Shown: in pieces, positions 1-49,476 of the stretch | Numbering within the stretch: the first letter of the stretch is position 1 | Layout: each line of letters starts with the position of its first letter | Assembly (NCBI RefSeq): GCF_001194135.2 | Contig: NC_068981.1 | Coordinates: 66,908,417 to 66,957,892 of the forward strand | Length of the DNA: 49,476 nucleotides | Reading direction: 5' to 3' | From: Octopus bimaculoides | Taxonomy: Eukaryota | Translations under genes and position numbers: made by a program | Notes under the pieces: model-generated | What the model saw: the letters and a program-made list of their open reading frames with translations, nothing else | What the model was told of the DNA's origin: nothing | Databases searched by the model: none

Positions 1-769
1 GGTGTTTATAATTGGTCGTTCCAAGCATAGAGTCTTGCAAACGGTGTTATTCGATCGAGGGTTTTTTTTTGAAGTGACTTAAAAGTTGGGAATATGTTTG
101 TAAGGTCAAATCAGAAACAGGAAGAGAAAATAAAAAGGGAGAGAGACAATAAACAAGTGAAGAAAGAGAAGGTGTGTTAGCTAGGGGTCAGGATAAAACG
201 ATAGAAGGAATGGAGAGGTGAGAGGGAGAGAGAGAGAGGAAAAAATGAGAGCGTAAAGAGTAAAAGAGTGTGAGGTATGTTAGCAGGGGTGTTGTGACAG
301 AGCTTAAGGGATGGGCATAGAAAGTGTAGAGAGAAGTAAAATTGAGGTGGAATGAAGAAGAAATGTCAAGTTGCTTAAATGAACAGGTTAGTGGTGAGTA
401 GAAGAGGAATTGAAGAATTTATATCTGTGAAGACGTATACACACATACGTATCCACACATGTATATAGACATTTACATACATCAATTCATATATACGCAT
501 ACAAACTCTTGTGTTTTACATGCATTCACGCTTATACACGCTCATTTATATCTCTTTTTGTATATATAAATTCTTACATACATAATTTAATGCATGTAGA
601 CTCACACACGCGCTTAAATGTATGCAAGTGTATGCATACACACATGCACACACACACACGCGCACGCACACACTCGCACGCACACGCGCGCACGCACACA
701 CACAGAGAGGCAGGTATACGTACATATATATATCTACACATACTCATATACAAATCCGTACTTATATAA

Positions 770-1383
770 AACATATATACCTATAATCATACATACTCAA
801 ATGTACCCGCTTGCATGCTCATATATGCATACATACAAACGTATATACACACATACATATATATACATATACATACATATATACATACACATATATATAT
901 ACATTTACACCTACATACATTCACACACATAATTCCTCTATCATACTTGAGGATCACGATCATTTAATTATATAATTGTATATGTATATATGTGCGTATG
1001 TATGTATGTATGTGCGTATGTATGTATGTATGTATGTATGTATGTATGTATGTATGCGTGGTGTATGTACATATAAGTAGAGGTGTGATAATAGATATGG
1101 ATACACGTATGTATGAGTTTGTGTATATACGTGAATGTGTATATATCTCTTATATATGTATATATATGTGTACGTGTGAGTGTATGTATGTATTATATAT
1201 ACGTATATATATATGTATGTATAAACATATATATGTGTGTGTGCGTATGCATATTTATATGTATATATGTGTATGTATATATGTACATGTATATATGTAT
1301 GTGTGTATATACGTGTGTATGTATGCATATATGAACATGCATGCGGGTACATGTAAATATATATGATTATAGGTATAGATATT
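770..1383. mobile_element. MITE/foldback-like insertion with long microsatellite-rich TIRs, flanked by TTATATAA duplication
   Basis: The start (aacatatatacctataatcatacatactcaaatgtacccgcttgcatgctc) mirrors the end (gaacatgcatgcgggtacatgtaaatatatatgattataggtatagatatt). TTATATAA lies at 762-769 and 1384-1391. The paralogous right arm has the empty site (cttatataggatcc on the minus strand near 2055-2065). Confidence 0.7.
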
Positions 1384-1650
1384 TTATATAAGGGATATTT
1401 GGGGTTTGACGGGCAACATTTGTTTTCTTAACGAAACACTTCAAACTTGGGACACTGGTAGAATGTGTCATATAAAACAGCTTCTCTTAACCTTCTTAAC
1501 AAAAAATTGTACATCGCAAGTTATTTCATGTTAAAGTTGTTGTATTTCTGTGATTTCAACCAATCACTGACGTCTATTCAGCTGTATACAGTTACTGCTG
1601 TTCGGTGTCAAGTGTGTTATTCCCTGTTTAATTATATCATTATTCCCTAG

Positions 1651-1865
1651 TAAGGGTTTAGGGTTTTAGGGTTAGGGTTCGGGTTTTAGGGTTAGGGTTC
1701 GGGTTTTAGGGTTAGGGTTCAGGTTTTATTGTTAGGGTTTTAGGGTTAGGGTTGGGGTTAGGGTTAGGGTTAGGGTTATGGTTATGAGTTATAGGGTTAG
1801 AGTTAAGGTTATGGCAAAAATAATCATAACCCTAACCGTAATCCTAAAACTAACCCTAACTCTAA
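1651..1865. repeat. Degenerate interstitial telomeric repeat, head-to-head (TTAGGG)n then (CCCTAA)n
   Basis: G-rich TTAGGG variants at 1651-1814 include three exact 20-mers gggttttagggttagggttc (1661-1720). A short spacer is followed by C-rich cataaccctaacc...taaccctaac at 1825-1865 and a 10-N gap. Confidence 0.9.
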
Positions 1866-2118
1866 NNNNNNNNNNTCAATAGACGTCAGTGATTGGTTGA
1901 AATTACCGAAATACGACAATTTTTTACATAAAATAACTTCGAATACAAATTTTTTTATCTGTTTTATACCACAAAATATACAAATATTCGAAGTTTGAAA
2001 GTGTTTCGGTACCAAAAACACTACAAAAAGAATGTTGCCCGTCAAAACCCAAGGATCCTATATAAGTAAAGATTTGTATATGAGCATGTATAGATATATA
2101 TATGTACGCATACCTGCA

Positions 2119-2165
<47 letters not shown>

Positions 2166-3064
2166 GTGTGCGCGCGCGTATGTATACACTTGCATACATT
2201 TATGCGCGTGTGTAAGTCTGTATGCATGCATTTATGTATGCAAGAATTTATATATACAAGAATAAATACAAATGAGTGTGTATATGCGTGAATGTGTGTA
2301 AAATACAAAAGTTTGTAAGCGCATATATGCGTTGGTATATGTAAATGTCTATATACATATGTGGTTACGTATGTGTGTATATATCTTTACAGATATGAAT
2401 TCTTTATTTCTTCTACTACTCACCAATAACCTGTCCATTTAAGAAACTTAACATTTCTTCTTCATTCTTCATTCCACATCAATTTTACTACCCTTTCCTT
2501 CTCTCTACACTTTCTATGTCCATCCCTTAAGCTCTGTCACAACACCCCTGCTAACATACCTCACACTCTTTTACTCTTTGCGCTCTCATTTCTTCCTCTC
2601 TCCTTCCCCATCACCCCTCCCTTCCTTCTGTCATTTTATCCTGACCACTAGCTAACACACCTCCTTCATCACTTGTTTATTGTTTCTCACCCCTTTTTTC
2701 TCTTCCAGTCTCTGATTTGACCTTACAAACACATTCTGAACTTTTAAGTCACTTCAAAAATAAACCCTCAATCGAATAACACCGTTTGTAAGACTCTATG
2801 CTTGGAACGACCAATTATAAATAGCATTGGAACTCACACACAAGGTGCAGGAAACTTATATATATACACCATTCTGCTTAAATAATGGAACTGCAAATAC
2901 AATATCCATACGTATCTCACGTCTGCTTTCATTCCTCCACTTCACTCTGTATTTCATAAACAAACATCGTAGCGTTGAAGCTGGAATATTTAAAAAAAAC
3001 AAAAAACATATGTAAATAATCCGATAGAATAAGTAATGTTGTTAAGGTAAAATGTTGATGGTAA

Positions 3065-3158
3065 TCCTCTTACGGCCGTTTCAGCGGTACAGTAATCCAT
3101 GTATTTTAAGAGTGCTTTCATTCCGAAAATTGGATACTACCTCCTTCGTCAGAGCGAA
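3065..3158 (-). ncRNA. Type I hammerhead ribozyme motif (PLE-type)
   Basis: Minus strand: TTCGCT-CTGACGA-AGGAGGTAGTATCCA[31 nt]TGGATTACTGTACCGCT-GAAAC-GGCC-GTA-AGAGGA. It has an intact core, GUA cleavage triplet, palindromic helix III and imperfect helices I and II. Confidence 0.7.
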
Positions 3159-3159
3159 T

Positions 3160-3545
3160 CTTATTCAGGGTTTCATATCTCGTGCTATGTTGTACTGGGT
3201 AAAATGAGATTTAGTTGTATATGAAGGTGCAGTTGTTAAGAGGAGGATGAAATGTTATAACAGGAGTTATGGGAAATGCGATTTAGGGAATGTTATAAAT
3301 GTTAAGCAGGTATTAATTGGTCAGTTATGAAGTTACAGGATGGCAGGAGTACAGGGTTAATCGAAATATAGATAATTAAACAATAAATGGTTAATTTCTT
3401 AAGTTTTAGCAAAATATTCAAATGTTGAACAATATCTATGGTTACAGGAAAATATAGCATCCGAAAACTTATTTAATGATGTAGTCCCATATCGGCGAAA
3501 GGATTTTCATGGAGTCTTTAATACACAATTTACATACACGTGTAA
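3160..3545 (-). mobile_element. Penelope-like element remnant adjoining the hammerhead
   Basis: The degenerate minus-strand translation includes NHRYCS...PITPVITFHPPL, resembling the PLE RT C-terminal/linker motifs (RICS...IPLVITYHP). It lies next to a PLE-type hammerhead. Confidence 0.4.
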
Positions 3546-3667
3546 TTGTATTGAATGGGGGTGCTTCTGCTGTTACTAACCAAGATAATGAGTATTGTAT
3601 ATTTATTTTTCAGTTCAAGTTCTTATATATACGAAGCTAGCTTTGTAGAAGATTTATATTTTGCGGT

Positions 3668-3670
<3 letters not shown>

Positions 3671-3745
<75 letters not shown>

Positions 3746-3813
3746 NNNNNNNNNNNNNNNNNNNNNNNNNNNNNNNNNNNNNNNNNNNNNNNNNNNNNNN
3801 NNNNNNNNNNNNN

Positions 3814-3860
<47 letters not shown>
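3671..3860. repeat. (CA)n and (TA)n microsatellites flanking an N gap
   Basis: Direct reading. Confidence 0.95.
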
Positions 3861-3868
<8 letters not shown>

Positions 3869-4269
3869 ATATATATATTACGGCCAGATCGATAGTCTCT
3901 CTTACACTTGCATTTCTTATCTTTTCTACTTTAGCTATGTTTAATTCATTCTCTATGACTGCAGTCTTCTAGAACTATTTTCGTTTATTTTATAGAATCG
4001 TCTTAAAAAAAAAATTCAAACTGGACATTAAAAGTAGTCACCTTAACCATCAGTTTAAAAGAACCATTAAAATCTACGAACATAGTAGAAAAATATATCT
4101 CTCTTTAAAATTTTGTGTTACATGGAATATAGACAGTAGCTAGCTGACTATACATTTTACAGCGTCAACATTTCAAGAATTATTTTTTTTTATCCATATT
4201 GTTACCTAGATAGTTATGTATACGAGGTTATATTATTTTACATAAAAGGTTAATATAGATTTGAATTCA

Positions 4270-15546: not shown

Positions 15547-16053
15547 AAAACGGAAAAGTCCAAAGAAAGAAGAAAAATTCCAACAGCAGGTGTGTAGTTA
15601 CATACACAGACGTGCATACACGCATGTATATGTATGTGACTGTAGCCAGATGCGAATCACCGACATTACAATCAGTTATCTAGCGCCATAGAGACTGATT
15701 AAATGCTGACACATGTGTATGTGTGTGTAGGCATATTAAGTATATACCCATATGTATCTATATCTGTTTGTAGAAATACATATATTTTAGTATGTTTATT
15801 CGTATACCATAAGCCTTCTGTTAATACCCACTTTCACGTTAGCACTTTGATATCTACACTCTTATCTGAATATATTTTGAGCCATGCAGCAGCATATTTT
15901 CGCATATTTTTATGTTTTAACTATCAAGACTATAAGTAATTTTTAATAAAGTTACATTTGCATCCATTAAAAATAACGTGAATAAATTAATTGACGGTTA
16001 ATGTTTTCAAAATTAGAATAACGAGACTCACGTTGGAATCGCGCTATAATATT

Positions 16054-16268
16054 GGTTTTAAATGTTGGCACAAGGGCCAATAGTTTTAGAAGAGGGAGTA
16101 AGTCGATGAAATCAACCCCAGTGCTCAAATATAATTATTTTAGCGACCCCGAAGGGATGAAAGACAGAGTCGAACTCGGTGGAATTTGAATCCAGAACGT
16201 GAAGACAGGCGAAATGCCGCTAAGTATGTAGCCCTGTGCGGTGACGATTTTGCTTGCTTGTTGCCTTA
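16054..16268 (-). mobile_element. tRNA-derived SINE (octopus-type, gaccccgaaaggatgaaaggcaaagtcgac family)
   Basis: Matches the copies at 39884-41314 in reverse orientation. Confidence 0.8.
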
Positions 16269-17070: not shown

Positions 17071-17160
17071 ATTTCCAACATATGTTTCGAAGATTACAAA
17101 TGGTTTCTTCCAAAGGAATAAGTGATGTTGATAAAGATGTAATCTTCTCTTCAGGGAAAT
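17071..17160 (-). ncRNA. Type I hammerhead ribozyme motif
   Basis: Minus strand: ATTTCC-CTGAAGA-GAAGATTACA[39 nt]TGTAATCTTC-GAAAC-ATAT-GTT-GGAAAT. Perfect 6-bp helix I, 10-bp helix II with G10.1-C11.1, palindromic helix III (AACATATGTT), GUU triplet. Confidence 0.8.
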
Positions 17161-17299
17161 ACATAGGAACCAGCTTAACCGTAAGACATTTTAAGCTAAC
17201 GTGATAACTTCTCTACCTACAGTTATCACATTCGGTTAAAATGTCTTACGGTTAAGCTGGTTCCTATGTATTTCCCTGAAGAGAAGATTACATCATTAT

Positions 17300-17304
<5 letters not shown>
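17126..17304. repeat. Near-perfect 69-bp inverted repeat (17126-17194 / 17236-17304)
   Basis: One mismatch between arms; an inner gtgataact/agttatcac pair extends the hairpin. Confidence 0.95.
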
Positions 17305-17340
<36 letters not shown>

Positions 17341-17726
17341 ATATATATATATGTGTACATATATATGTATAGATTAGGACAATCAGTAAGTTGTCATAAT
17401 TGGACTTAGAGTTTCAAATGCTGGAGCTAAGAGCTACAATGCATTCTCATTGGCTATTATGACAATAGACGTATAAAAGAATTGTTGAATAAAAGAGAAG
17501 TTACTCTAATAGGTAGGAAAAAATATAAAAGATAAAAAATAAACGCAACTATATTCTCGGAATACATAGACATAAAAACCACCTGCGTTCATAACGTCTA
17601 CATAGGTACACACACACACACACACACACACAAACATGTATATATACATGCCCATGCACACACAAACATATATATGCACTTACGCACTCATGCACATGTC
17701 CATATACATACACGCACACGCACACA

Positions 17727-17802
<76 letters not shown>

Positions 17803-17872
17803 TATATATACGTATATATGCACGCAACTTTATCCTCATATACACATAGGTGCATGCTTACATATATATTTA

Positions 17873-17911
<39 letters not shown>

Positions 17912-17931
17912 TCATACAGGCATACATCCAC

Positions 17932-18211
17932 ACTCACCGCATATATGAATATACGTGTATGTACACATATACACAAATATACCTGTATATATACATGTAC
18001 ATCCTCCTATCACACTCCTACAAGTGCAGATATACAAGCATAATCATATACATATACGTATAAAAGTAGACGTGTGCATGAAAGTATATGTATATGCATA
18101 TGCTTGTATATCTGCACTTGTAGGAGTGTGATAGGAGGATGTATATGTGTATATATCTATATATATCTGTGTATATATGCACAAATATGTATATTCATAT
18201 ATGTGGTGAGT
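17932..18211. repeat. Inverted repeat (17932-18057 / 18083-18211) with a 45-bp perfect core
   Basis: tacatcctcctatcacactcctacaagtgcagatatacaagcata and its exact reverse complement. Confidence 0.9.
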
Positions 18212-18297
18212 CTAAATTCAATAATAGGACGAATTCTTTTACAAGAATTTATCAAGTAGCTAGCGTGAAAAAAACCTCATAAGGGAAAAAATCCATA

Positions 18298-18783
18298 TAA
18301 ATTAATTTACAAATTTACCGTTAATTCTATTATTATCAAATGTCACTAATTTAAGTATGATAATAACAGAATCAACAATACAAGCGACGGCAGGCCAAAA
18401 AATAGCATTTAAATAACCGAGGGATTAAAATTAATCAAAGGACATACTGAGTATGTCTACCTACTTGAAATAACAATCAAAACCTGTTTTAAATCGCCAA
18501 AAAATACACTGGTGATAACTACAGAAATCAAACGAAGGCAAATTTTGCTTGATTTCTGTAGTTATCACCAGTGTATTTTTTGGCGATTTAATAACGAATT
18601 TTGACTGTTATTTCAAGCAGGTAGACGTACTTAGTATTTCCATTGATTAATTTTAGTTCCTCGGCTATTTAAATGCTATTTTTTGGCTTGCTGTCGCCTG
18701 TATTGTTGATTCTGTTATTATCATTCTTAAATTAGTGGCATTGGATAATAATAGAATTAACGGTACCTTTGTGAATTAATTTT
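18298..18783. repeat. ~234-bp-arm palindrome with 17-nt spacer; third partial copy at ~19012-19130
   Basis: ...atcgccaaaaaatacactggtgataactacagaaatcaa | acgaaggcaaattttgc | ttgatttctgtagttatcaccagtgtattttttggcgat...; arms are roughly 85-90% identical by eye. Confidence 0.9.
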
Positions 18784-19144
18784 AATAAATTATTTGTCTC
18801 GTAATTCTGTAACAAAATTATTTTACACTGAGAAGCTGCTGTGATTTCGGCGCGAAACGAATCAGTAGTGGCACATAATTCGGAAGGATAGGCTAGGAAT
18901 CGCTTATCCTGGTAATGCGTGCTGAAGAAGCTAAGGCTTATTGTGCCAATGCAGAAACTAGTTCACATAAATCCAAATACTTAAATGTATGTAAGTAGAT
19001 TGTTTTAACCAAATTTGCCTTCGTTTGATTTCTGTAGCTACCGCCAGTGTATTTTTGGCGATTTAATAACGAGTTTTGACTGTTATTTCAAGCAGGTAGA
19101 CATACTTAGTATGTCCTTTGATTAATTTTAATTATATATATATA

Positions 19145-19231
<87 letters not shown>

Positions 19232-19600
19232 ATATGTGTATGAGTACGTAAATGCACATATAGGTTTGTGTGTACATATACAGGTTTGTGTGAGTGCGTA
19301 CATATGTAGAAGTTATGAACACAGGAGGTTTTTATGTCTATGTATTGTGAAAATATGGTCGGGTGTATTTTTCATCTTTTATATTTTCATACCTATTAGA
19401 GTAACTTCCCTTTTATTCAACGGTTTTTCTTTTATAGCGTCTGTTTTCATAATAGCCAATGAGAATGCATCGTAGCTCTTAGGTCCGGCATTTGACACTC
19501 TGAGTCCTATCATGACAGCTTACTGATTGTCCTAAACTATATATATATAAATTCCTCTACTTAATATCGAGGTCTCATTTTGTTGTTGTTATTGTTGTTA

Positions 19601-37224: not shown

Positions 37225-38823
37225 TATATTCTTTTATCCATTTCGGCCATGTGGATGCGGTCATGTACCACCATGATTTTGTACTTTTTCATATTCTTCT
37301 TTGGCTGATTTCTTCAGGGTGGTGGTATTTCATATCATCACTCCTGTACGTACTTTTTCCTTGGTTGTTGGCCCATTTGGTGTATGAGGAAGTTTGACAT
37401 TGTACTCATGCCGGGCCATTGGTTTCTCTTGTAGAGAGAATATATCCAGTGTCATTTTTGAAGACATCCACTTCTACATTGTGTAGATTTCTTAATTTTG
37501 TTTTTTCACGGCGTTGAAGAGCTGTGGGCCTTGGAGCTCTAAGCTGTTGCAGTACCTGGTCCTGACTTTAATGGGTACAATACAATGGTACAATACAATG
37601 ACATCCAGTTCGGGCATTTATATAACACTCAATCCTGAAATTAGGTAGTAGCCCTTCTATAATTTTCCATATGTAGATTATTACATATCTGTCACACCTT
37701 CGCTCCAGCGAGTAAAGTCGTAGTTTTTGTAACCTTTCCCTGTAGTTAATATGTTGCACTGTTACAATATTTTTAGCGTAGTGACGTTGGATTGCTTCAA
37801 GCTCCGTTGTTTGATACTATGCGGTGATCACAGCTGAGAGCAGTAGTCCAGGCGTCTGAGAACAAAGATCCTCCACAGAGTCAATATGACTTCTTGATCT
37901 CTTATCTTGAAGGAGCCTAGTTGCCATCCTATCAGTTGCCTCTACTTCGTTGACATCTTGGTAATGTGCATATGAGATGTTGTTGTTGCTGTTGGCACTC
38001 CGTCGCTTACGACGTCGAGGGTTCCAGTTGATCCGATCAACGGAACAGCCTGCTCGTGAAATTAAAGTGCAAGTGGCTGAGCACTCCACAGACACGTGTA
38101 CCTTTAACGTAGTTCTCGGGGATATTCAGCGTGACACAGTGTGACAAGGCTGACCCTTTGAATTACAGGCACAACAGAAACAGGAAGTAAGAGTGAGAGA
38201 AAGTTGTGGCGAAAGAGTACAGCAGGGTTCGCCACCATCCCCTGCCGGAGCCTCGTGGAGCTTTTGGTGTTTTCGCTCAATAAACACTCCCAATGCCCGG
38301 TCTGGGAATCGAAACCGCGATCCTATGACCGCGAGTTCGCTGCCCTAACCACTGGGCCATTGTGCCTCCACGGATATGAGATGATGCACATAATAATTCC
38401 CAGGTCTTTTACTGTCTGTGACTGTGTGATTGCAGTGCCTCCGGGTCCTGTATATGCTGGCTGCGGTGCATTTGTGAGTTGAAAGTGCAGTGCTTGAAAT
38501 TTTCTAGCATTACACTGCATGTTGTTTTTTTCAGCTCACTTGTGTATTGCATTTAGATCCTGGTGGTTTCTTTGTTACTTGTGATGATTTTCTATGTCGG
38601 CGTAGCGAATGACAGTAACTGTCTGAGTAACTATGGGCATGTTTAGGAGAACTATTATAAACAGTAATGACTCTCCTAACAGTAATTATAAACAGTAATG
38701 GTCCCCAGACAGTTCCTTGGGAAACGCCACTCAGGATTTGTCCTTTATCAGAGAGGGCACCATTGGCTGAAGCTGCCTCACTTCTGTCTGTTAGGAAGTC
38801 ATGTTGCCACTCTCCCAGTTTAC
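37225..38823 (-). mobile_element. CR1/L2-group LINE reverse transcriptase remnant, split by a SINE
   Basis: Minus-strand motifs in correct order: GVSQGTVWGPLLF, RYAD, NARKFQALHF, VKDLGIIM, FKIRDQEVILTLWRIFVLRRLDYCSQL, YRERLQKLRLYSLERR, GPQLFNAV. Frameshifts and stops are present. Confidence 0.9.
37980..38373 (-). mobile_element. Full-length young tRNA-derived SINE with (AAC)n tail and 10-bp TSD
   Basis: Head gtggaggcacaatggcccagtggttagggc...ggtttcgattccc; TSD ATATGAGATG at 37970-37979 and 38374-38383. Confidence 0.92.
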
Positions 38824-38825
38824 TA

Positions 38826-39436
38826 TTAGGTTGTCAAGAAAGTTCTTGCGGAATGTTTAATTTTGGTTTTAAATTATGTATTTTCGAATTAATTTTCGTA
38901 AAATTACTTTGAATTTATATATCATTTTAAAGCCCGTTTTTCTCTCTATCTAATCGTGTTACTCTTCTTCATTTTGAATAATTAGGCCATTTTTTCCCCC
39001 GGAACGTTGAATACAACATGGACAAAAAGCAAATTCGCACAATGTCTTATTCCAGTTCAAGCTAGGCTGAAAAGCTGCGGAAACAGCTCGCGATATCAAC
39101 GGTGCGTTTGGCCCAGGAACCACTAATGAACGTACAACACAATGGTGGTTCAAGAAATTTCGTAGCGGTGACGATAGTCTTGAAGATGTCAACAACGATC
39201 AACGGATGTCAACAACGATCCACTAAGAGCCTTAGTCGAAGCCAATCCACGCACAACTGTTCGACAGCTTGCTTCTGAATTAAATGTAAAGTATACGACA
39301 ATTTCCAACCACATGAAAGAGATTGGAAAAACAAAAATACTTGAGAAATGGGCGCCGCACGAATTGAACAACAGCCTCCCCCCACCCCCAAAAAACGCAG
39401 TTTTGAAGTGTCGTCTTCCCTTCTTTTACGCAAAAC
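38826..39436 (+). mobile_element. Mariner transposon 5' half (left TIR plus transposase N-terminus, pseudogenised)
   Basis: TA plus ttaggttgtcaagaaagttcttgcgg is an Hsmar1-like TIR. ATG at 39018; LFQFKLG*KAAETARDINGAFGPGTTNERTTQWWFKKFRSGD...NPRTTVRQLASELNV...KWAPHEL. The element is truncated before the DD34D domain. Confidence 0.92.
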
Positions 39437-39883
39437 GACTTCTTGATCTCTTATCTTGAAGGAGCCTTTCACACATTTGAACAACGGAATGAGAGAAATT
39501 ACTGACTTTTCACCGCACATACACACATTAATATTACTAAATATATCTCACTTTTCCGTTTTGAACTTTGTCTACACTAGCCGAAAGCTAAAAATTTTGT
39601 TTCATGCTCGGAATATCTTAAATTGCAGTTTAGAACTAACATCTTTCTGCAGATACGTAGCTAATTATTTATTTTAAAAAAGTACACGTCGATATAATTA
39701 TCTTGATTAATTTATATCACACTCTGTTTTGTCAAATACTCATTAACACTTTATATCAATCTGATTGGCTTTAGGTGCATTTAGTTCTTATCACAAAAAT
39801 TTACAACACTCAAACGTTTCTTCTTGAGTACATTCGTATTTCCAGACACCATACATAATAACGCTGTCATTATGTATACACAC

Positions 39884-40160
39884 TAAGGCGACGAGCTGGC
39901 AGAATCGTTAGCACGCCGGGCAGAATGCTTAACAGCATTTCGTCCGTTTTTACGTTCTGAGTTCAAATTCCGCCAAGGTCGAATTTGCCTTTCATCCTCT
40001 TGGGGTGGAGAAATTAAGTACCATTAAATACCAGGGTCAATGTAATCGACTATCCCCCCCCCCACAAAAAATAATTGCAGGTCTTGTGTTTATAGTAAAT
40101 ATAATCGACTATCTCCCTTCCCCACAATTTCAGGCCTTGTGCCTATAGTAGAAAGGATAA
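39884..40160 (+). mobile_element. tRNA-derived SINE
   Basis: A box gagctggcagaatcg, B box gagttcaaattcc, and internal duplication of the taatcgactatc segment. Confidence 0.9.
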
Positions 40161-40174
40161 TGTATACACATATT

Positions 40175-40833
40175 GGTTTCAAATTTTGGCAGAACGCCAG
40201 CAACTTCGGGATGGCGGTAAGTTGATTACATCTACCCCAGTACTTAACTGGTACTTATTGTATCAACCCCAAAAGGATGAAAGGCAAAGTCTACATTGGT
40301 GGAATTTGAACACAGAACGTAATGACGGACAAAATGCTGCTAAGCATTCTGTCCGGCGTGCTAACGATTCTGCCAGCTCGCTATCTTAATAACAGTAATA
40401 ATCCTTTCTACTAAAGACACAAGGCCTGAAATTTCGGTGGAGGGATCTAGCTGATTACATCGACACCATGTTTTATTGGTACTTAATTTCTCGATCCCGA
40501 AAGAATAAAGGACAAAGTCGACCACAGCGGAATTTGAACTCAGAACGTAACAATGGACGAAATGCCACTATGAATTTTGCCCGGTGTGCTAACGATTCTT
40601 ATTTCTTTATTGCTCACAAGGGGCTAAACATAGAGAGGACAAACAAGGACAGACAAAGGGATTAAGTCGATTACATCGACCCCAGTGCGTAACTGATACT
40701 TAATTTATCGACCCCGAAATGACGAAAGGCAAAGTTGACCTCGGCGGAATTTGAACTCAGAACGTAACGGCAGACGAAATACCGCTAAGTATTTCGTCCA
40801 GCGTGCTAACGTTTCTGCCAGCTCACCGCCTTA
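40175..40833 (-). mobile_element. Three tandem copies of the same SINE family (~40175-40388, ~40397-40599, ~40600-40833)
   Basis: Each contains gattacatcgacccc...gaaaggcaaagtcgac...ggaatttgaactcagaacgtaa...gtgctaacga, but each has a different tail. Confidence 0.9.
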
Positions 40834-40849
40834 ATTATGTATACACATA

Positions 40850-41099: not shown

Positions 41100-41314
41100 A
41101 AAATTTAAACTTCCAAATTATGGCACGTGGCCAGTAATTTTAGTGGGAGGGAGTTGTCCAATGACAGCGACCCCAGTACATTACTGATACTTTATTTTAT
41201 CGATTCTGCAAAGATGAAATGCAAAGTTGACCTCGGTAGTATTTGAACTCAAAACGCGAAGAGTTAGAAAATTGTTCTTCATTGCGCTAACAATTTTGCC
41301 AACTTGCTGCTTTA
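41100..41314 (-). mobile_element. Older copy of the same SINE, followed by (AAC)/(AAT)n
   Basis: gaccccagtac...gcaaagttgacctcggtagtatttgaactcaaaacg. Confidence 0.8.
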
Positions 41315-41406: not shown

Positions 41407-43014
41407 ACTACTAATAATAATAATAATATAGATATCACTGTCTTTCGAATAGTTTCTGCCTACCAAGTTCCTTTCACAAAGAATCCAGAGATTATGGTAA
41501 GAAAACTTTTCCAAGGTGATCAAACGTAGAATTACGTGTTTGTGACGCAAACTTGTTAGCTTAACAGCCATACCTACGTTGGCTGATGTTAGCCGTTGAG
41601 TGAAATGGATGATATTACGTGACATGTGAGCCTTTCTTAAGTGCATTAATAATGTACGTGAAGTAAATTCGTTTACAGCGGGAACTGAAATGAATTCGTT
41701 ATGCTGGTTCGTTAGTAATCCTCATTCTTGCTCTACAGTACATTCAAAATGACAAACGTAAATATATTAGGTTTTGAATTAAAACACTGTATTTTAAACG
41801 TGGAGAAACTATAAGGCGAGACGTTAATGCCTTCGGAATAAGCATTAATGCATAAGTGAATGAATTGGCTTTAAAAAAGGATAGAACATTATAAGCTAAA
41901 TCATGAGTTTGCAGGATGAGTATCTCCTTTATTATTGCATGCCTGATCACAAGAGTGTATTAGAAGAAATTTTAGTTTTAGGAATGGAAAAATACTGAAG
42001 AAGCGGTAAATTCCAAGAGATAAATGGAAGTACCAAAAAACAAGCGTTAAGCTCCCTGTAGTTTTAAAGAGGAACTACCAAAGAAAAACGGTAAGCTCCT
42101 TTAGAATAGATACCATGATGCAAATGGTTTTAATTTACTTGCACTAATGCGCTCGGGAAGTATATAATTGCACGATATCATACTGATCACTGTTATGAAA
42201 ATATAAAAATCATGTGTAAAGATTATGTTTGCAACAGAGTTAACAGACTAGAGGCCTACGTTGACATAAAAAAATCATTTACGTATTTCAAAATCCAAGC
42301 AATTTACAACTGAAACACCGCCTCTCCATAGAAGGTTTATTTCCTAGTACATTAACCAATAATTATCATAGATAATACGTTGTTAATTGTTTTATACTGA
42401 TTTAAATATGATTAACTTTCTCTTCAACTAACCTATTATTTTTATGTTCTGTTTTTACAAAGACACCAAAATATTGTTATTATCTTGTCTCTGATGTTTA
42501 CAATTTTGAAGATGGAGGTAGACTATAAATCTTTGGAACTTTTATGAATATACATTATAGAACTCGATGAATTTCATGAAAGAATTTCTGTGATATAAAA
42601 TATTTAAACTCGGCCATAAAATGTAATAAAAACAATAGTGTTTTATACAGAAATATTTTTTTCTCACCGATAATTTTCTTTGTTATGAAGAATATATATT
42701 CCTCTATAAAAATGCAAAACACCATTAAAAATCATTATATATATATATATATATATATGATACATCCCAATATTTCTTTGTTTAAAAAAGATTTATTATT
42801 TGGGCTGTGGGGTTATAAAAACCAACAAACTTTTGGACTATAAAACTTACGCATTTATGCTCAAATCAGGCTGAGTTCATCTTTGTATGTCACCCATTAA
42901 AGAAGTACGCATCTAGTACTAAGATCAATATGGTACCTTAAAGTCAACCAAATTACCTCTCCTAAAACTAGTTGGGCTTGTGCCAATGTCACAACTTATC
43001 ATTATCCTCATTAT

Positions 43015-43247
43015 TAAGGCGGCGAGCTAGCAGAGGCGTTAACAGGTCGAACAAAATGCTTAGCGGCATTTCGTCCGTCGTTACGTTTTGAGTTCAAATT
43101 TCACTGAGTTCAACTTTACCTTTTACCTTTCATCCTTTCAGAGTCGATAAATTGAGTGCTAGTGAAATACTGGGGTTGATATAATCGACTAGTCCTCTCC
43201 CGCAAAATTTCAGGCCTTGTGCTTTTAGTAGAAAGTATTATTATTAT
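43015..43247 (+). mobile_element. tRNA-derived SINE
   Basis: aaggcggcgagctagcagag...gagttcaaatt...caggccttgtgcttttagtagaaag(tat)n. Confidence 0.88.
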
Positions 43248-43440
43248 GTTTTGGGATGTGGATAGGAAAATTGCTAGAGCAAGAAACACAGTAACTTGCG
43301 GTATTTAATTGTGCTTCTCCTTATGATGAAAATTCAGATTCCGAGACTAAATACAATAAGTATTGAGTATTTAATTGACTGTTCCTTTCTCTAACAACTT
43401 GTGATTTTGTGTCAATGTTAGGCAATATTATCATTCACAA

Positions 43441-43669
43441 TAAGGCAGTAAGTTGGCAGAATCGTTATCGCGCCGGGCAAAATATTCAGCGGCATTTCGC
43501 CCCTCTCTACGTTCTGAGTTTAAATTCTGCCGATGTCGACTTTACCTTTCACGCTCTCAGTGTCGATAAAATAAGCACCAGTTGAACTACAGGGCCGATG
43601 TAACCGACCTTATATACCCTTCCCGAAATTGCTTGTCTTGTACAAACATTTGAAATCAGTATTATCATT
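43441..43669 (+). mobile_element. tRNA-derived SINE
   Basis: taaggcagtaagttggcagaatcgttatcgcgccgggc...gagtttaaattctgcc. Confidence 0.85.
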
Positions 43670-44039: not shown

Positions 44040-44324
44040 AAAAAGCTCCACGAGGCTCCGGCAGGGGATGGTGGCGAACCCTGCTGTACTCTTCCACCAC
44101 AACTTTCTCTCACTCTTACTTCCTGTTTCTGTTGTGCCTGTAATTCAAAGGGTCATCCTTGTCACACTGTGTCACGCTGAATATCCCCGAGAACTACGTT
44201 AAGGGTACACGTTTCTATGGAGTGCTCAGCCACTTGCACGTTAATTTCACGAGCAGGCTGTTCCGTTGATCGGATCAACTGGAACCCTCGACGTCGTAAG
44301 CGACAGGGTGCCAACAACAACAAC
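44040..44324 (+). mobile_element. Second copy of the young (AAC)n-tailed SINE (head lost in N gap)
   Basis: Reverse complement of ~37985-38270 with about 10 mismatches counted by eye. Confidence 0.92.
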
Positions 44325-49209: not shown

Positions 49210-49426
49210 TTATAGTTATATACACACAAACGTATATCTCTCTCTATATATTACGTGTATGTATACATACACTGATACTTGCATGCATCTCTATGCATAT
49301 GGAATAATATACATATGTACGCATATACAGACATTTGAAAATACATATTGTACACACACATATATCTATATCTCTCTGTACACACGCACACACACGTTTA
49401 TATATATATATATATACATAGACACA

Positions 49427-49476
<50 letters not shown>

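What the first reader, a model, noticed from the sequence alone, without database searches (positions are those of the whole stretch)
5..2821. 2.8-kb inverted duplication centred on a head-to-head telomeric array
Seen: two diverged arms in inverted orientation each run into TTAGGG-type repeats on their own strand and meet at ~1815-1825. Known: molluscs use TTAGGG telomeres, and inverted subtelomeric sequence flanking (TTAGGG)n(CCCTAA)n is the signature of end-to-end chromosome fusion (e.g. human 2q13). Inference: this is either a fossil telomere fusion or a foldback/Helentron-like element carrying TTAGGG microsatellite. Arm divergence (~20% by eye) argues against a pure assembly artefact.
Basis: partly seen in the sequence, partly recalled or inferred. 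Interest (0 to 1): 0.7.

Follow-up and report, generated by a model that had tools for sequence, protein, structure and literature searches.

The report
Old fold-back repeat with telomere-like apex
The inverted duplication meeting at head-to-head TTAGGG-type repeats is real, but it is one of several decayed hairpin-shaped repeats in this stretch and is more likely an ordinary fold-back element or local fold-back duplication than the scar of a chromosome fusion.

Summary
Left arm 5-768 and 1393-1580 mirrors right arm 2821-2059 and 2058-1876. Identity is 86% by blastn and 88-89% over aligned columns. A TTAGGG-like array on the + strand (1661-1785) turns into CCCTAA-like repeats (1820-1865).

The strand switch lies inside the left contig, before the 10-N gap. 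Mirror register predicts about 149 bp missing at that gap, so the two sides are not continuous as written.

Corrections to the finding:
- Arm divergence is 7-16% (K2P), not about 20%.
- The left arm carries an extra 624-bp palindrome (769-1392), flanked by TATATA.
- Only 4 bases lie left of the repeat, so its outer edge and any target-site duplication cannot be judged.

The same window holds at least four more palindromes (17.1-19.6 kb) of similar divergence. No dispersed copy of the arms could be looked for, because no eukaryotic genome is reachable with these tools.

My ranking:
- Decayed foldback-type element with a telomere-like minisatellite at its apex: about 0.4.
- Local fold-back duplication at an interstitial telomeric tract: about 0.33.
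- Telomere-fusion scar: about 0.1.
- Assembly artefact: about 0.07.

A Helentron-like reading is not supported. Interest is low to moderate.

The parts
5..768 (+). Left arm, outer segment. Purine-rich unique part 5-420, then CA/CATA microsatellite-rich part 420-768. Mirror of 2821-2059.
   Evidence: blastn 85.7% over 781 columns, E = 0. Collinear global alignment. The outermost 32 bp (5-36 vs 2821-2790) and a 60-bp block (255-314 vs 2579-2520) are identical. K2P is 0.075 for 5-349 and 0.151 for 350-768.
769..1392 (.). Nested 624-bp palindrome present only in the left arm. Arms are about 769-930 and 1225-1384. (CATA)n mirrors (TATG)n around a unique centre near 931-975. TATATA lies on both sides (763-768 and 1385-1390); the matching site of the right arm has a single TATATA.
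   Evidence: Inverted repeat 761-920 vs 1233-1392 and 761-901 vs 1392-1258 at 87.9%. Arms 88% identical, K2P 0.13. The gap in the global alignment falls exactly at 769-1392. Flanks read.
1393..1580 (+). Left arm, inner unique segment. Mirror of 2058-1876.
   Evidence: It is 85% identical with many small indels, K2P 0.165. A 26-bp exact block (1553-1578 vs 1903-1878) abuts the gap.
1581..1660 (+). Left-only unique 80 bp between the arm and the array. Its mirror copy is either inside the gap or deleted.
   Evidence: No counterpart anywhere in the window.
1661..1785 (+). TTAGGG-like array with the G-strand pointing at the axis. It has a 20-bp higher-order unit (TTTTAGGG TTAGGG TTCGGG) about 3.5 times, then about 6 clean TTAGGG units.
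   Evidence: TRF rows. Pattern scan. Unit parse.
1786..1819 (.). Asymmetric 34-nt spacer at the apex: decayed telomere-like units plus CAAAAATAAT. It contains a local 7-bp stem, GGTTATG/CATAACC.
   Evidence: Register scan. The DNA fold of 1736-1865 is a hairpin with a 34-nt loop, -29.9 kcal/mol, z = -8.8, with 0 of 200 shuffles folding as well.
1820..1865 (-). CCCTAA-like array on the + strand (TTAGGG-like on the - strand), decayed, cut off by the gap.
   Evidence: TRF 1827-1865, consensus TAACCC. Pairs with 1785-1740 at 85%.
1866..1875 (.). Assembly gap of 10 N. Mirror register predicts about 159 bp here.
   Evidence: Gap list. Register sums are 3605 left of the gap and 3456 right of it.
1876..2058 (-). 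Right arm, inner segment. Mirror of 1580-1393.
2059..2821 (-). Right arm, outer segment. Mirror of 768-5. Homology stops at 2821/2822.
   Evidence: Beyond the boundary only 2 of 4 comparable bases pair.

Best explanation
WHAT IT IS. I read this as a decayed, non-autonomous foldback-type element. It is a unit made of two long inverted arms, at least 0.95 kb each, with a short interstitial telomere-like minisatellite as passenger sequence at its apex. It is not made from two chromosome ends.

PROPOSED HISTORY.
1. The unit entered or arose as a near-perfect palindrome. If it was mobile, it was moved in trans through its terminal roughly 30 bp. This step is inferred.
2. Once fixed, it decayed as neutral DNA. 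This is shown by 7-16% divergence between the arms, with a 2:1 transition bias and microsatellite-length changes.
3. Its centre became the most asymmetric part. This is shown by the 34-nt spacer, the roughly 149-bp deficit on the right, and the highest divergence and indel load next to the apex. It is the usual fate of palindromes that can extrude hairpins; that link is inferred from established knowledge.
4. A second, smaller palindromic unit (769-1392) sits in one arm only, with TATATA on both sides and a single TATATA at the matching site of the other arm. So palindromic units of this architecture behave as insertable, or precisely excisable, units in this genome. The presence or absence is shown; the direction of the event is inferred.

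THE TELOMERE-LIKE TRACT. It evolved in place by tandem duplication of a 20-bp three-unit block, not by telomerase.
For: - Collinear mirror homology of both sides from the outer end to within 80 bp of the arrays.
- Outermost 32 bp identical between the arms, followed by an immediate mismatch.
- The strand switch lies inside a contig, and the apex folds as a hairpin (z = -8.8).
- The nested palindrome is present in one arm only, with duplicated TATATA and an 'empty' site in the other arm.
- There are four further palindromes or inverted repeats at 17126-17304, 17932-18211, 18299-18782 (with an extra half-copy at 19011-19132) and 17360-17760 vs 19171-19549. Their K2P values are 0.11-0.14 and those with a defined centre have short unique loops. 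That is roughly one palindrome per 9 kb of read sequence, a density easy to reach for mobile families and hard to reach for rare rearrangements.
- The 20-bp higher-order unit in the array.
- No coding capacity in the arms.
Against: - No second copy of either arm occurs in the other 46 kb.
- No genome of the source organism could be searched, so the defining property of a mobile family, dispersed copies, is untested.
- A target-site duplication cannot be read, because only 4 bases lie left of the repeat. A palindromic TTATAA at both ends could be one, or could simply be part of the repeat.
- Arms of about 1 kb or more are long for a non-autonomous element and look like generic microsatellite-rich intergenic DNA.
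- The smaller palindromes at 17-19 kb show no clear target-site duplications, so they may not be mobile either.
- The termini match no transposon superfamily that I can name.
Confidence: 0.4

Rival explanations
1. Local fold-back inverted duplication. A pre-existing interstitial telomere-like tract stalled replication or broke. The 3' end folded back on a short inverted match within the tract (for example GGTTATG/CATAACC) and copied the adjacent 1-1.7 kb in reverse. A second switch at 2821/2822 returned to the original template. The locus would be single-copy.
For: - A short asymmetric spacer lies at the axis, with a 7-bp inverted match beside it.
- The arms look like ordinary intergenic DNA, rich in the same microsatellites as the rest of the window.
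- No other copy occurs in the window.
- The other palindromes lack clear target-site duplications.
- Telomere-like tracts are documented fragile and rearrangement-prone sites (PMC6410037).
Against: - The density of palindromes in this window would demand a very active local mechanism.
- The nested palindrome is absent as a whole from the other arm. At least that one is not a fold-back copy of neighbouring sequence.
- The outer junction cannot be inspected on the left.
Confidence: 0.33
2. Fossil telomere fusion. Either two chromosome ends with paralogous subtelomeres joined end to end, or sister chromatids fused after telomere loss (a breakage-fusion-bridge product). The result was head-to-head arrays flanked by inverted subtelomeric sequence, later shortened and decayed.
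For: - Both G-rich strands point at the junction, as at human 2q13 (PMC6410037).
- The arms are homologous and inverted.
- The structure sits at the very start of the window, which may be a scaffold end.
Against: - Orientation alone has a 1-in-2 chance in any palindrome.
- The arrays total about 200 bp and carry a 20-bp higher-order unit.
- Homology appears to stop after 0.95 kb on the right, and the next 46 kb has no telomere-like or subtelomere-like repeats.
- Other palindromes without telomere repeats occur nearby, so no special event is needed.
- Divergence of 7-16% implies a recent event, whereas the octopod species karyotyped in PMC5646656 all have 2n = 60 (listed). This last point holds only if the window is cephalopod, which is unverified.
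Confidence: 0.1
3. Assembly or scaffolding artefact. The 1.9-kb left contig is a paralogous copy from elsewhere, placed in inverted orientation through shared telomere-like k-mers or mate pairs. Alternatively, the turn-around comes from chimeric reads.
For: - A gap sits 50 nt from the axis, and its 10-N length is a placeholder.
- The left contig is the terminal piece of the window.
- The assembly has 13 gaps in 49 kb, mostly at simple repeats.
Against: - The TTAGGG to CCCTAA switch, with its unique CAAAAATAAT spacer, is inside a contig.
- That switch predicts an inverted arm on the other side, and the independently assembled right contig starts with exactly that arm.
- The arms differ by transition-biased substitutions and a 624-bp insertion, unlike chimeric-read palindromes, which have identical arms.
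Confidence: 0.07
4. Two separate copies of a roughly 1-kb retroposed element with a TTAGGG-type 3' tail, inserted tail to tail.
For: Both arms end at the same outer base, and the array lies at the same end of each.
Against: - Tail-primed insertion into an existing tail is expected to give head-to-tail copies, not tail-to-tail copies. This is inference from the target-primed reverse transcription mechanism.
- No RNA-polymerase-III or tRNA-like head, poly(A) or ribozyme signal was found.
- No other copy occurs in the window.
Confidence: 0.05

Closest known systems
Foldback and long-inverted-repeat DNA elements (Drosophila FB, Galileo, Tetris; whole-palindrome miniature elements such as MADE1)
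   Same: The structure is almost entirely two long inverted arms around a short centre. It has simple or tandem repeats inside the arms and no coding capacity. Other elements are nested within it. Titles and abstracts of PMC3573991 and PMC4079207, listed, describe long internally repetitive inverted repeats.
   Different: No dispersed copies, transposase partner or target-site duplication could be shown. The arm repeats are ordinary microsatellites plus a telomere-like tract, not an ordered family-specific subrepeat array.
Fusion-type interstitial telomeric sequence (human 2q13-2q14)
   Same: Head-to-head (TTAGGG)n(CCCTAA)n arrays with decayed units, flanked by inverted homologous sequence (PMC6410037).
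   Different: The arrays are about 200 bp, not about 0.8 kb. The flanking homology seen here is about 1 kb, not large subtelomeric duplicons. No evidence exists that the arms occur at chromosome ends or that synteny breaks here.
Head-to-head interstitial telomeric repeats with a linker, as classified in plants and animals
   Same: Exactly this arrangement is a recognised class of interstitial telomeric site: head-to-head, degenerate, with a linker (PMC9498494).
   Different: That class is descriptive and implies no mechanism.
Fold-back inversions, meaning inverted duplications with a short spacer, as seen in breakage-fusion-bridge cycles and replication template switching
   Same: An inverted duplication with a short asymmetric spacer and a short inverted match at the turn.
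   Different: Those events are usually described in tumours or constitutional rearrangements at scales from kb to Mb. Here the structure is old, small and fixed in an assembly.

Membership tests
Fusion-type interstitial telomeric sequence (telomere-telomere fusion scar) | Head-to-head arrays with both G-rich strands running towards the junction | tested here: met
   TTAGGG-type repeats on + at 1661-1812 and CCCTAA-type repeats on + at 1820-1865.
Fusion-type interstitial telomeric sequence (telomere-telomere fusion scar) | Flanks are subtelomeric sequences that also occur at present-day chromosome ends | not testable with these tools
   No genome of the source organism is available. Two metagenome scans with arm motifs found nothing.
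Fusion-type interstitial telomeric sequence (telomere-telomere fusion scar) | The site joins two ancestral chromosomes (a synteny break in relatives) | not testable with these tools
   No comparative genomes are available, and the left flank is only 4 bases.
Fusion-type interstitial telomeric sequence (telomere-telomere fusion scar) | The two arrays are independent telomeres rather than mirror copies of one array | tested here: inconclusive
   1820-1865 pairs with 1785-1740 at 85%, but any two telomere-like arrays pair at 6-nt offsets. Only 46 nt are available right of the axis.
Foldback / long-inverted-repeat transposable element | Long terminal inverted repeats making up most of the unit, with a short non-repeated centre | tested here: met
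   Arms of at least 0.95 kb and a 34-nt spacer.
Foldback / long-inverted-repeat transposable element | Target-site duplication at the two ends | not testable with these tools
   Only GGTG lies left of the repeat. No direct repeat of 1-4 bases is present (GGTG vs TAGC). A palindromic TTATAA at 6-11 and 2815-2820 could be one, or could be part of the repeat.
Foldback / long-inverted-repeat transposable element | Multiple dispersed copies in the genome | not testable with these tools
   None in the remaining 46 kb. The protein-word search on arm translations gave no hits, but a degenerate reverse-transcriptase fragment from the same window also gave none. That database therefore says nothing about this genome's repeats.
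Foldback / long-inverted-repeat transposable element | Arms built of family-specific tandem subrepeats (FB-type) | tested here: inconclusive
   The arms hold (CA)n, (CATA)n and the telomere-like tract, but no ordered subrepeat ladder.
Helentron / Helitron-derived non-autonomous element | Short subterminal inverted repeats and a 3' hairpin only, with no full-length arm complementarity, plus rolling-circle termini | tested here: not met
   Complementarity runs along the whole arms. No coding or RNA signature was found.
Fold-back inverted duplication (repair or replication origin) | Inverted duplication with a short asymmetric spacer and a short inverted match at the turn | tested here: met
   A 34-nt spacer, and GGTTATG/CATAACC flanking an 11-nt loop.
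Fold-back inverted duplication (repair or replication origin) | Single locus, with a related species carrying one arm only | not testable with these tools
   No comparative data.

The most novel reading that the evidence does not exclude
The structure is a surviving scar of a germline telomere fusion in a mollusc lineage. It would come either from sister chromatids fused after telomere loss (a fixed breakage-fusion-bridge product) or from two chromosome ends with paralogous subtelomeres. It would then mark a recent karyotype event in a group thought to have very stable chromosome numbers.
Probability: 0.08. Interest if true: 0.65.

Novelty: new member of a known kind. Interest (0 to 1): 0.27.

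Why it matters
Head-to-head telomere repeats flanked by inverted homology are routinely read as chromosome-fusion scars. This case shows the same picture arising where smaller palindromes of the same build are common. That is a caution for scans that call fusions from motif orientation alone.

If the arms prove to be a dispersed family, it would be a foldback element that seeds head-to-head telomere-like sites around the genome. If they prove single-copy, it would be a clean natural example of a fold-back duplication started at an interstitial telomeric tract. If they sit at chromosome ends, the fusion reading revives.

Practically, the locus also explains an assembly gap, and it predicts what that gap contains.

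Tried and rejected
1. COPIES ELSEWHERE, VIA PROTEINS. I translated stop-free frames of both arms and searched the 5.8-billion-protein collection. There were no hits. An exact look-up of ten window ORFs found none on record. A degenerate reverse-transcriptase fragment from 38.3-38.8 kb, used as a de facto positive control and as a way to name the organism, also found nothing. These negatives are therefore uninformative.

2. COPIES ELSEWHERE, VIA DNA. Two exact-motif scans of metagenome contigs were run, one with a 26-mer from the 60-bp identical block and one with a 27-mer from the terminus. Both found nothing, as expected for animal non-coding DNA.

3. RNA FAMILIES. Rfam found nothing at gathering thresholds. 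Only sub-threshold hits to microsatellite-derived miRNA models appeared. There are no tRNAs. So there is no ribozyme or SINE-head clue.

4. MIRROR SYMMETRY OF VARIANT UNITS. I tried to separate one duplicated array from two independent telomeres this way. With only 46 nt right of the axis and the 6-nt periodicity, the test has no power.

5. HOMOLOGY WITH THE 17-19.6 kb PALINDROMES. None was found beyond microsatellites.

6. REJECTED READINGS.
- Helentron-like: rejected because the arms are complementary along their whole length.
- Haplotype duplication: rejected because 7-16% divergence plus a 624-bp indel is far too much.
- Long-read chimeric palindrome: rejected because the differences are substitution-dominated.

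7. SOURCE ORGANISM. It could not be verified. Literature confirms TTAGGG as the only experimentally determined cephalopod telomere motif (PMC13218726; PMC6160780).
Full report
WHAT IS THERE

Reading 1-4200 and comparing the two sides of the gap confirms a large inverted repeat.
- 5-768 pairs with 2821-2059: 85.7% over 781 columns, 789 bits, E = 0.
- 1497-1578 pairs with 1957-1878 (85.5%).
- 1384-1420 pairs with 2065-2031.

A global alignment of 1-1660 against the reverse complement of 1876-2830 is collinear from end to end, with 813 of 919 aligned columns identical. It has one large interruption: 769-1392 exists only on the left.

Between the arms, Tandem Repeats Finder reports three things:
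- a TTAGGG array at 1666-1811 (22.5 copies, 72% matches);
- a 20-bp higher-order unit GGGTTTTAGGGTTAGGGTTC at 1661-1777 (5.9 copies, 82% matches);
- a TAACCC array at 1827-1865.

Twelve-mers of the telomere type occur 13 times, all within 1666-1865, against 0.09 expected. Both G-rich strands run towards the junction.

THE GAP

The change of strand, together with a unique CAAAAATAAT and 46 nt of CCCTAA-type sequence, lies left of the 10-N gap, inside one contig. The contig to the right of the gap begins at the mirror image of base 1580.

The best pairing register of the arrays is 1740-1785 with 1865-1820. That register gives 85% pairing, and a DNA hairpin of -29.9 kcal/mol with z = -8.8 and a 34-nt loop. 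The coordinate sum in this register is 3605. Immediately right of the gap the sum is 3456.

About 149 bp are therefore missing on the right. They correspond to the mirror copy of 1581-1739: 80 bp of unique sequence plus the part of the array built from 20-bp units. So the letters on the two sides of the gap are not continuous as written. Either the gap is about 160 bp or the right arm has lost this piece.

An assembler would be expected to fail exactly here, where the right array shares words with the reverse complement of the left array. Nothing is coding, so reading frame is not an issue.

IS IT AN ARTEFACT?

Probably not, for three reasons.
- The turn-around inside the left contig predicts an inverted arm beyond it, and the separately assembled right contig starts with that arm.
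- The arms differ by 53 transitions and 26 transversions over 5-768, by microsatellite-length changes and by a 624-bp insertion. That is evolutionary divergence. Chimeric reads would give identical arms, and raw long reads would give indel-rich noise.
- What remains unproven is only that the two contigs are neighbours. This rests on scaffolding plus the mirror logic.

CORRECTIONS TO THE FINDING

Divergence is lower than the roughly 20% judged by eye:
- K2P 0.075 in the outer unique part (5-349);
- K2P 0.151 in the microsatellite-rich part;
- K2P 0.165 next to the apex.

There are also a 60-bp and a terminal 32-bp block of perfect identity.

The arms are unequal in length. The left arm starts 4 bases from the window start. 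Of those 4 bases, 2 pair with the right flank and the adjacent one does not. The repeat therefore probably ends at 5/2821, but this cannot be established, and no target-site duplication longer than 4 bases can be read.

The window ends in (TA)n and has an odd length, so it may be a whole scaffold. If so, the structure sits at a scaffold end for assembly reasons.

THE NESTED PALINDROME

Positions 769-1392 are themselves a palindrome. The arms (about 769-930 and 1225-1384) are 88% identical. (CATA)n mirrors (TATG)n around a unique centre of about 45 nt.

It is bounded by TATATA on both sides, and the corresponding site of the right arm reads CTTATATAGG with a single TATATA. Neither of its arms is present in the right arm. 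So it is not a fold-back copy of neighbouring sequence. It entered the left arm, or left the right arm, as a unit.

THE NEIGHBOURHOOD

A masked self-comparison of the whole window shows that the finding is not alone.
- 17126-17304, 17932-18211 and 18299-18782 are each self-complementary. Arm identities are 90%, 87% and 90%.
- A further half-copy of the third lies at 19011-19132 (92%).
- All of these sit beside or within a larger inverted repeat, 17360-17760 vs 19171-19549 (88% over aligned columns). That repeat has (AC)n and (GT)n mirrored at its inner edges.
- Their K2P values (0.11-0.14) resemble those of the main structure.
- None shares sequence with the main arms beyond microsatellites, and none shows a clear target-site duplication.

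Palindromes with short unique loops therefore occur about once per 9 kb of read sequence here. Only one has a telomere-like tract at its apex.

WEIGHING THE EXPLANATIONS

Chromosome-fusion scar. This would need two things: arms that occur at chromosome ends, and a synteny break. Neither can be tested with the tools at hand.
- The only agreeing feature is array orientation, which any palindrome gets right half of the time.
- The two sides are collinear copies of one sequence right up to the arrays.
- The arrays are short and carry a higher-order unit, which shows evolution in place.
- Homology seems to stop after 0.95 kb.
- The following 46 kb has no telomere-like or arm-like sequence.
- Similar palindromes without telomere repeats lie nearby.
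- TTAGGG is the only experimentally determined cephalopod telomere motif (PMC13218726; PMC6160780). The octopod species karyotyped in PMC5646656 (listed) all have 2n = 60. A fusion young enough to leave arms 7-16% diverged would therefore be unexpected. This argument holds only if the window is cephalopod, which I could not verify.

The two remaining readings differ in one prediction: dispersed copies against a single locus. I prefer a decayed foldback-type element (0.40) for three reasons:
- a smaller unit of the same build demonstrably behaves as an insertable unit inside it;
- the termini are perfectly conserved for 32 bp and then stop;
- the density of palindromes is easier to reach by mobile families.

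A local fold-back duplication started at an interstitial telomeric tract (0.33) remains close behind.
- The arms look like generic intergenic DNA.
- The apex has a short asymmetric spacer with a 7-bp inverted match.
- Telomere-like tracts are known fragile sites (PMC6410037).
- The neighbouring palindromes lack target-site duplications.

Fusion gets about 0.10, artefact about 0.07, and tail-to-tail retroposed copies about 0.05.

A Helentron-like element is not supported. The arms are complementary over their whole length, and no rolling-circle, ribozyme or coding trace exists.

COMPARISON WITH WHAT IS KNOWN

Descriptively, this is a head-to-head, degenerate interstitial telomeric site with a linker, which is a recognised class (PMC9498494).

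Structurally it resembles foldback and long-inverted-repeat elements such as FB, Galileo and Tetris (listed). Membership is unproven, because copy number, target-site duplication and a transposase partner are untested.

It resembles the human 2q13 fusion site only in array orientation and inverted flanks.

VERDICT

This is a real, old palindrome of a kind that is common in this sequence. The telomere-like apex makes it look special, but the evidence does not favour a fusion. It counts as a new member of a known kind, with interest of about 0.27.

The decisive tests are:
- a genome-wide search with the arms;
- flank-anchored long reads across the gap, with a predicted gap content of about 160 bp mirroring 1581-1739;
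- the orthologous locus in a sister species.

Noticed in passing
window 17126-19549: A cluster of palindromes. 17126-17304 (179 bp), 17932-18211 and 18299-18782 are each self-complementary (87-90% arm identity). An extra half-copy of the last lies at 19011-19132. They sit beside or within a larger inverted repeat, 17360-17760 vs 19171-19549, with (AC)n/(GT)n mirrored at its inner edges. No clear target-site duplications.
   Followed up: partly
window 769-1392: A 624-bp palindrome present in the left arm only. It is flanked by TATATA on both sides, with a single TATATA at the matching site of the right arm (2059-2066). It is either an inserted unit or a precise excision.
   Followed up: partly
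window 1661-1731: The telomere-like array is organised as a 20-bp higher-order unit (TTTTAGGG TTAGGG TTCGGG) repeated about 3.5 times before the clean TTAGGG units. This points to growth by tandem duplication in place.
   Followed up: yes
window 39873-40845, 41161-41256, 43009-43662, 16049-16268: A repeat family of about 180 bp, present in at least eight copies in both orientations at 74-86% identity. It is probably a SINE-like or short dispersed repeat. It was not classified.
   Followed up: no
window 37982-38265 and 44041-44324: A 284-bp repeat, 96% identical, in inverted orientation. The first copy lies inside degenerate frames at 37571-38833 (-) that look by eye like a non-LTR reverse transcriptase. 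There was no Pfam hit and no protein hit.
   Followed up: partly
window 39184-39456 (+): A fragment resembling the helix-turn-helix of a Tc1/mariner-type transposase. The Pfam matches are weak and below cutoff: PF01498 at E = 2.8e-4 and 21.5 bits against a cutoff of 31.5.
   Followed up: partly
window 1-4 and 49399-49476; 13 gaps listed: The window starts 4 bases outside the inverted repeat, ends in (TA)n and has an irregular length. It may be a whole scaffold. Most of its 13 N-gaps are bordered by dinucleotide repeats, for example (AC)n | gap | (TA)n at 3671-3878.
   Followed up: no
window 5-2821, divergence gradient: Arm divergence rises towards the apex: K2P 0.075 in the outer unique part against 0.165 in the inner unique part, which also has many small indels. 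This may reflect palindrome-centre instability, but it was not tested against a null.
   Followed up: partly
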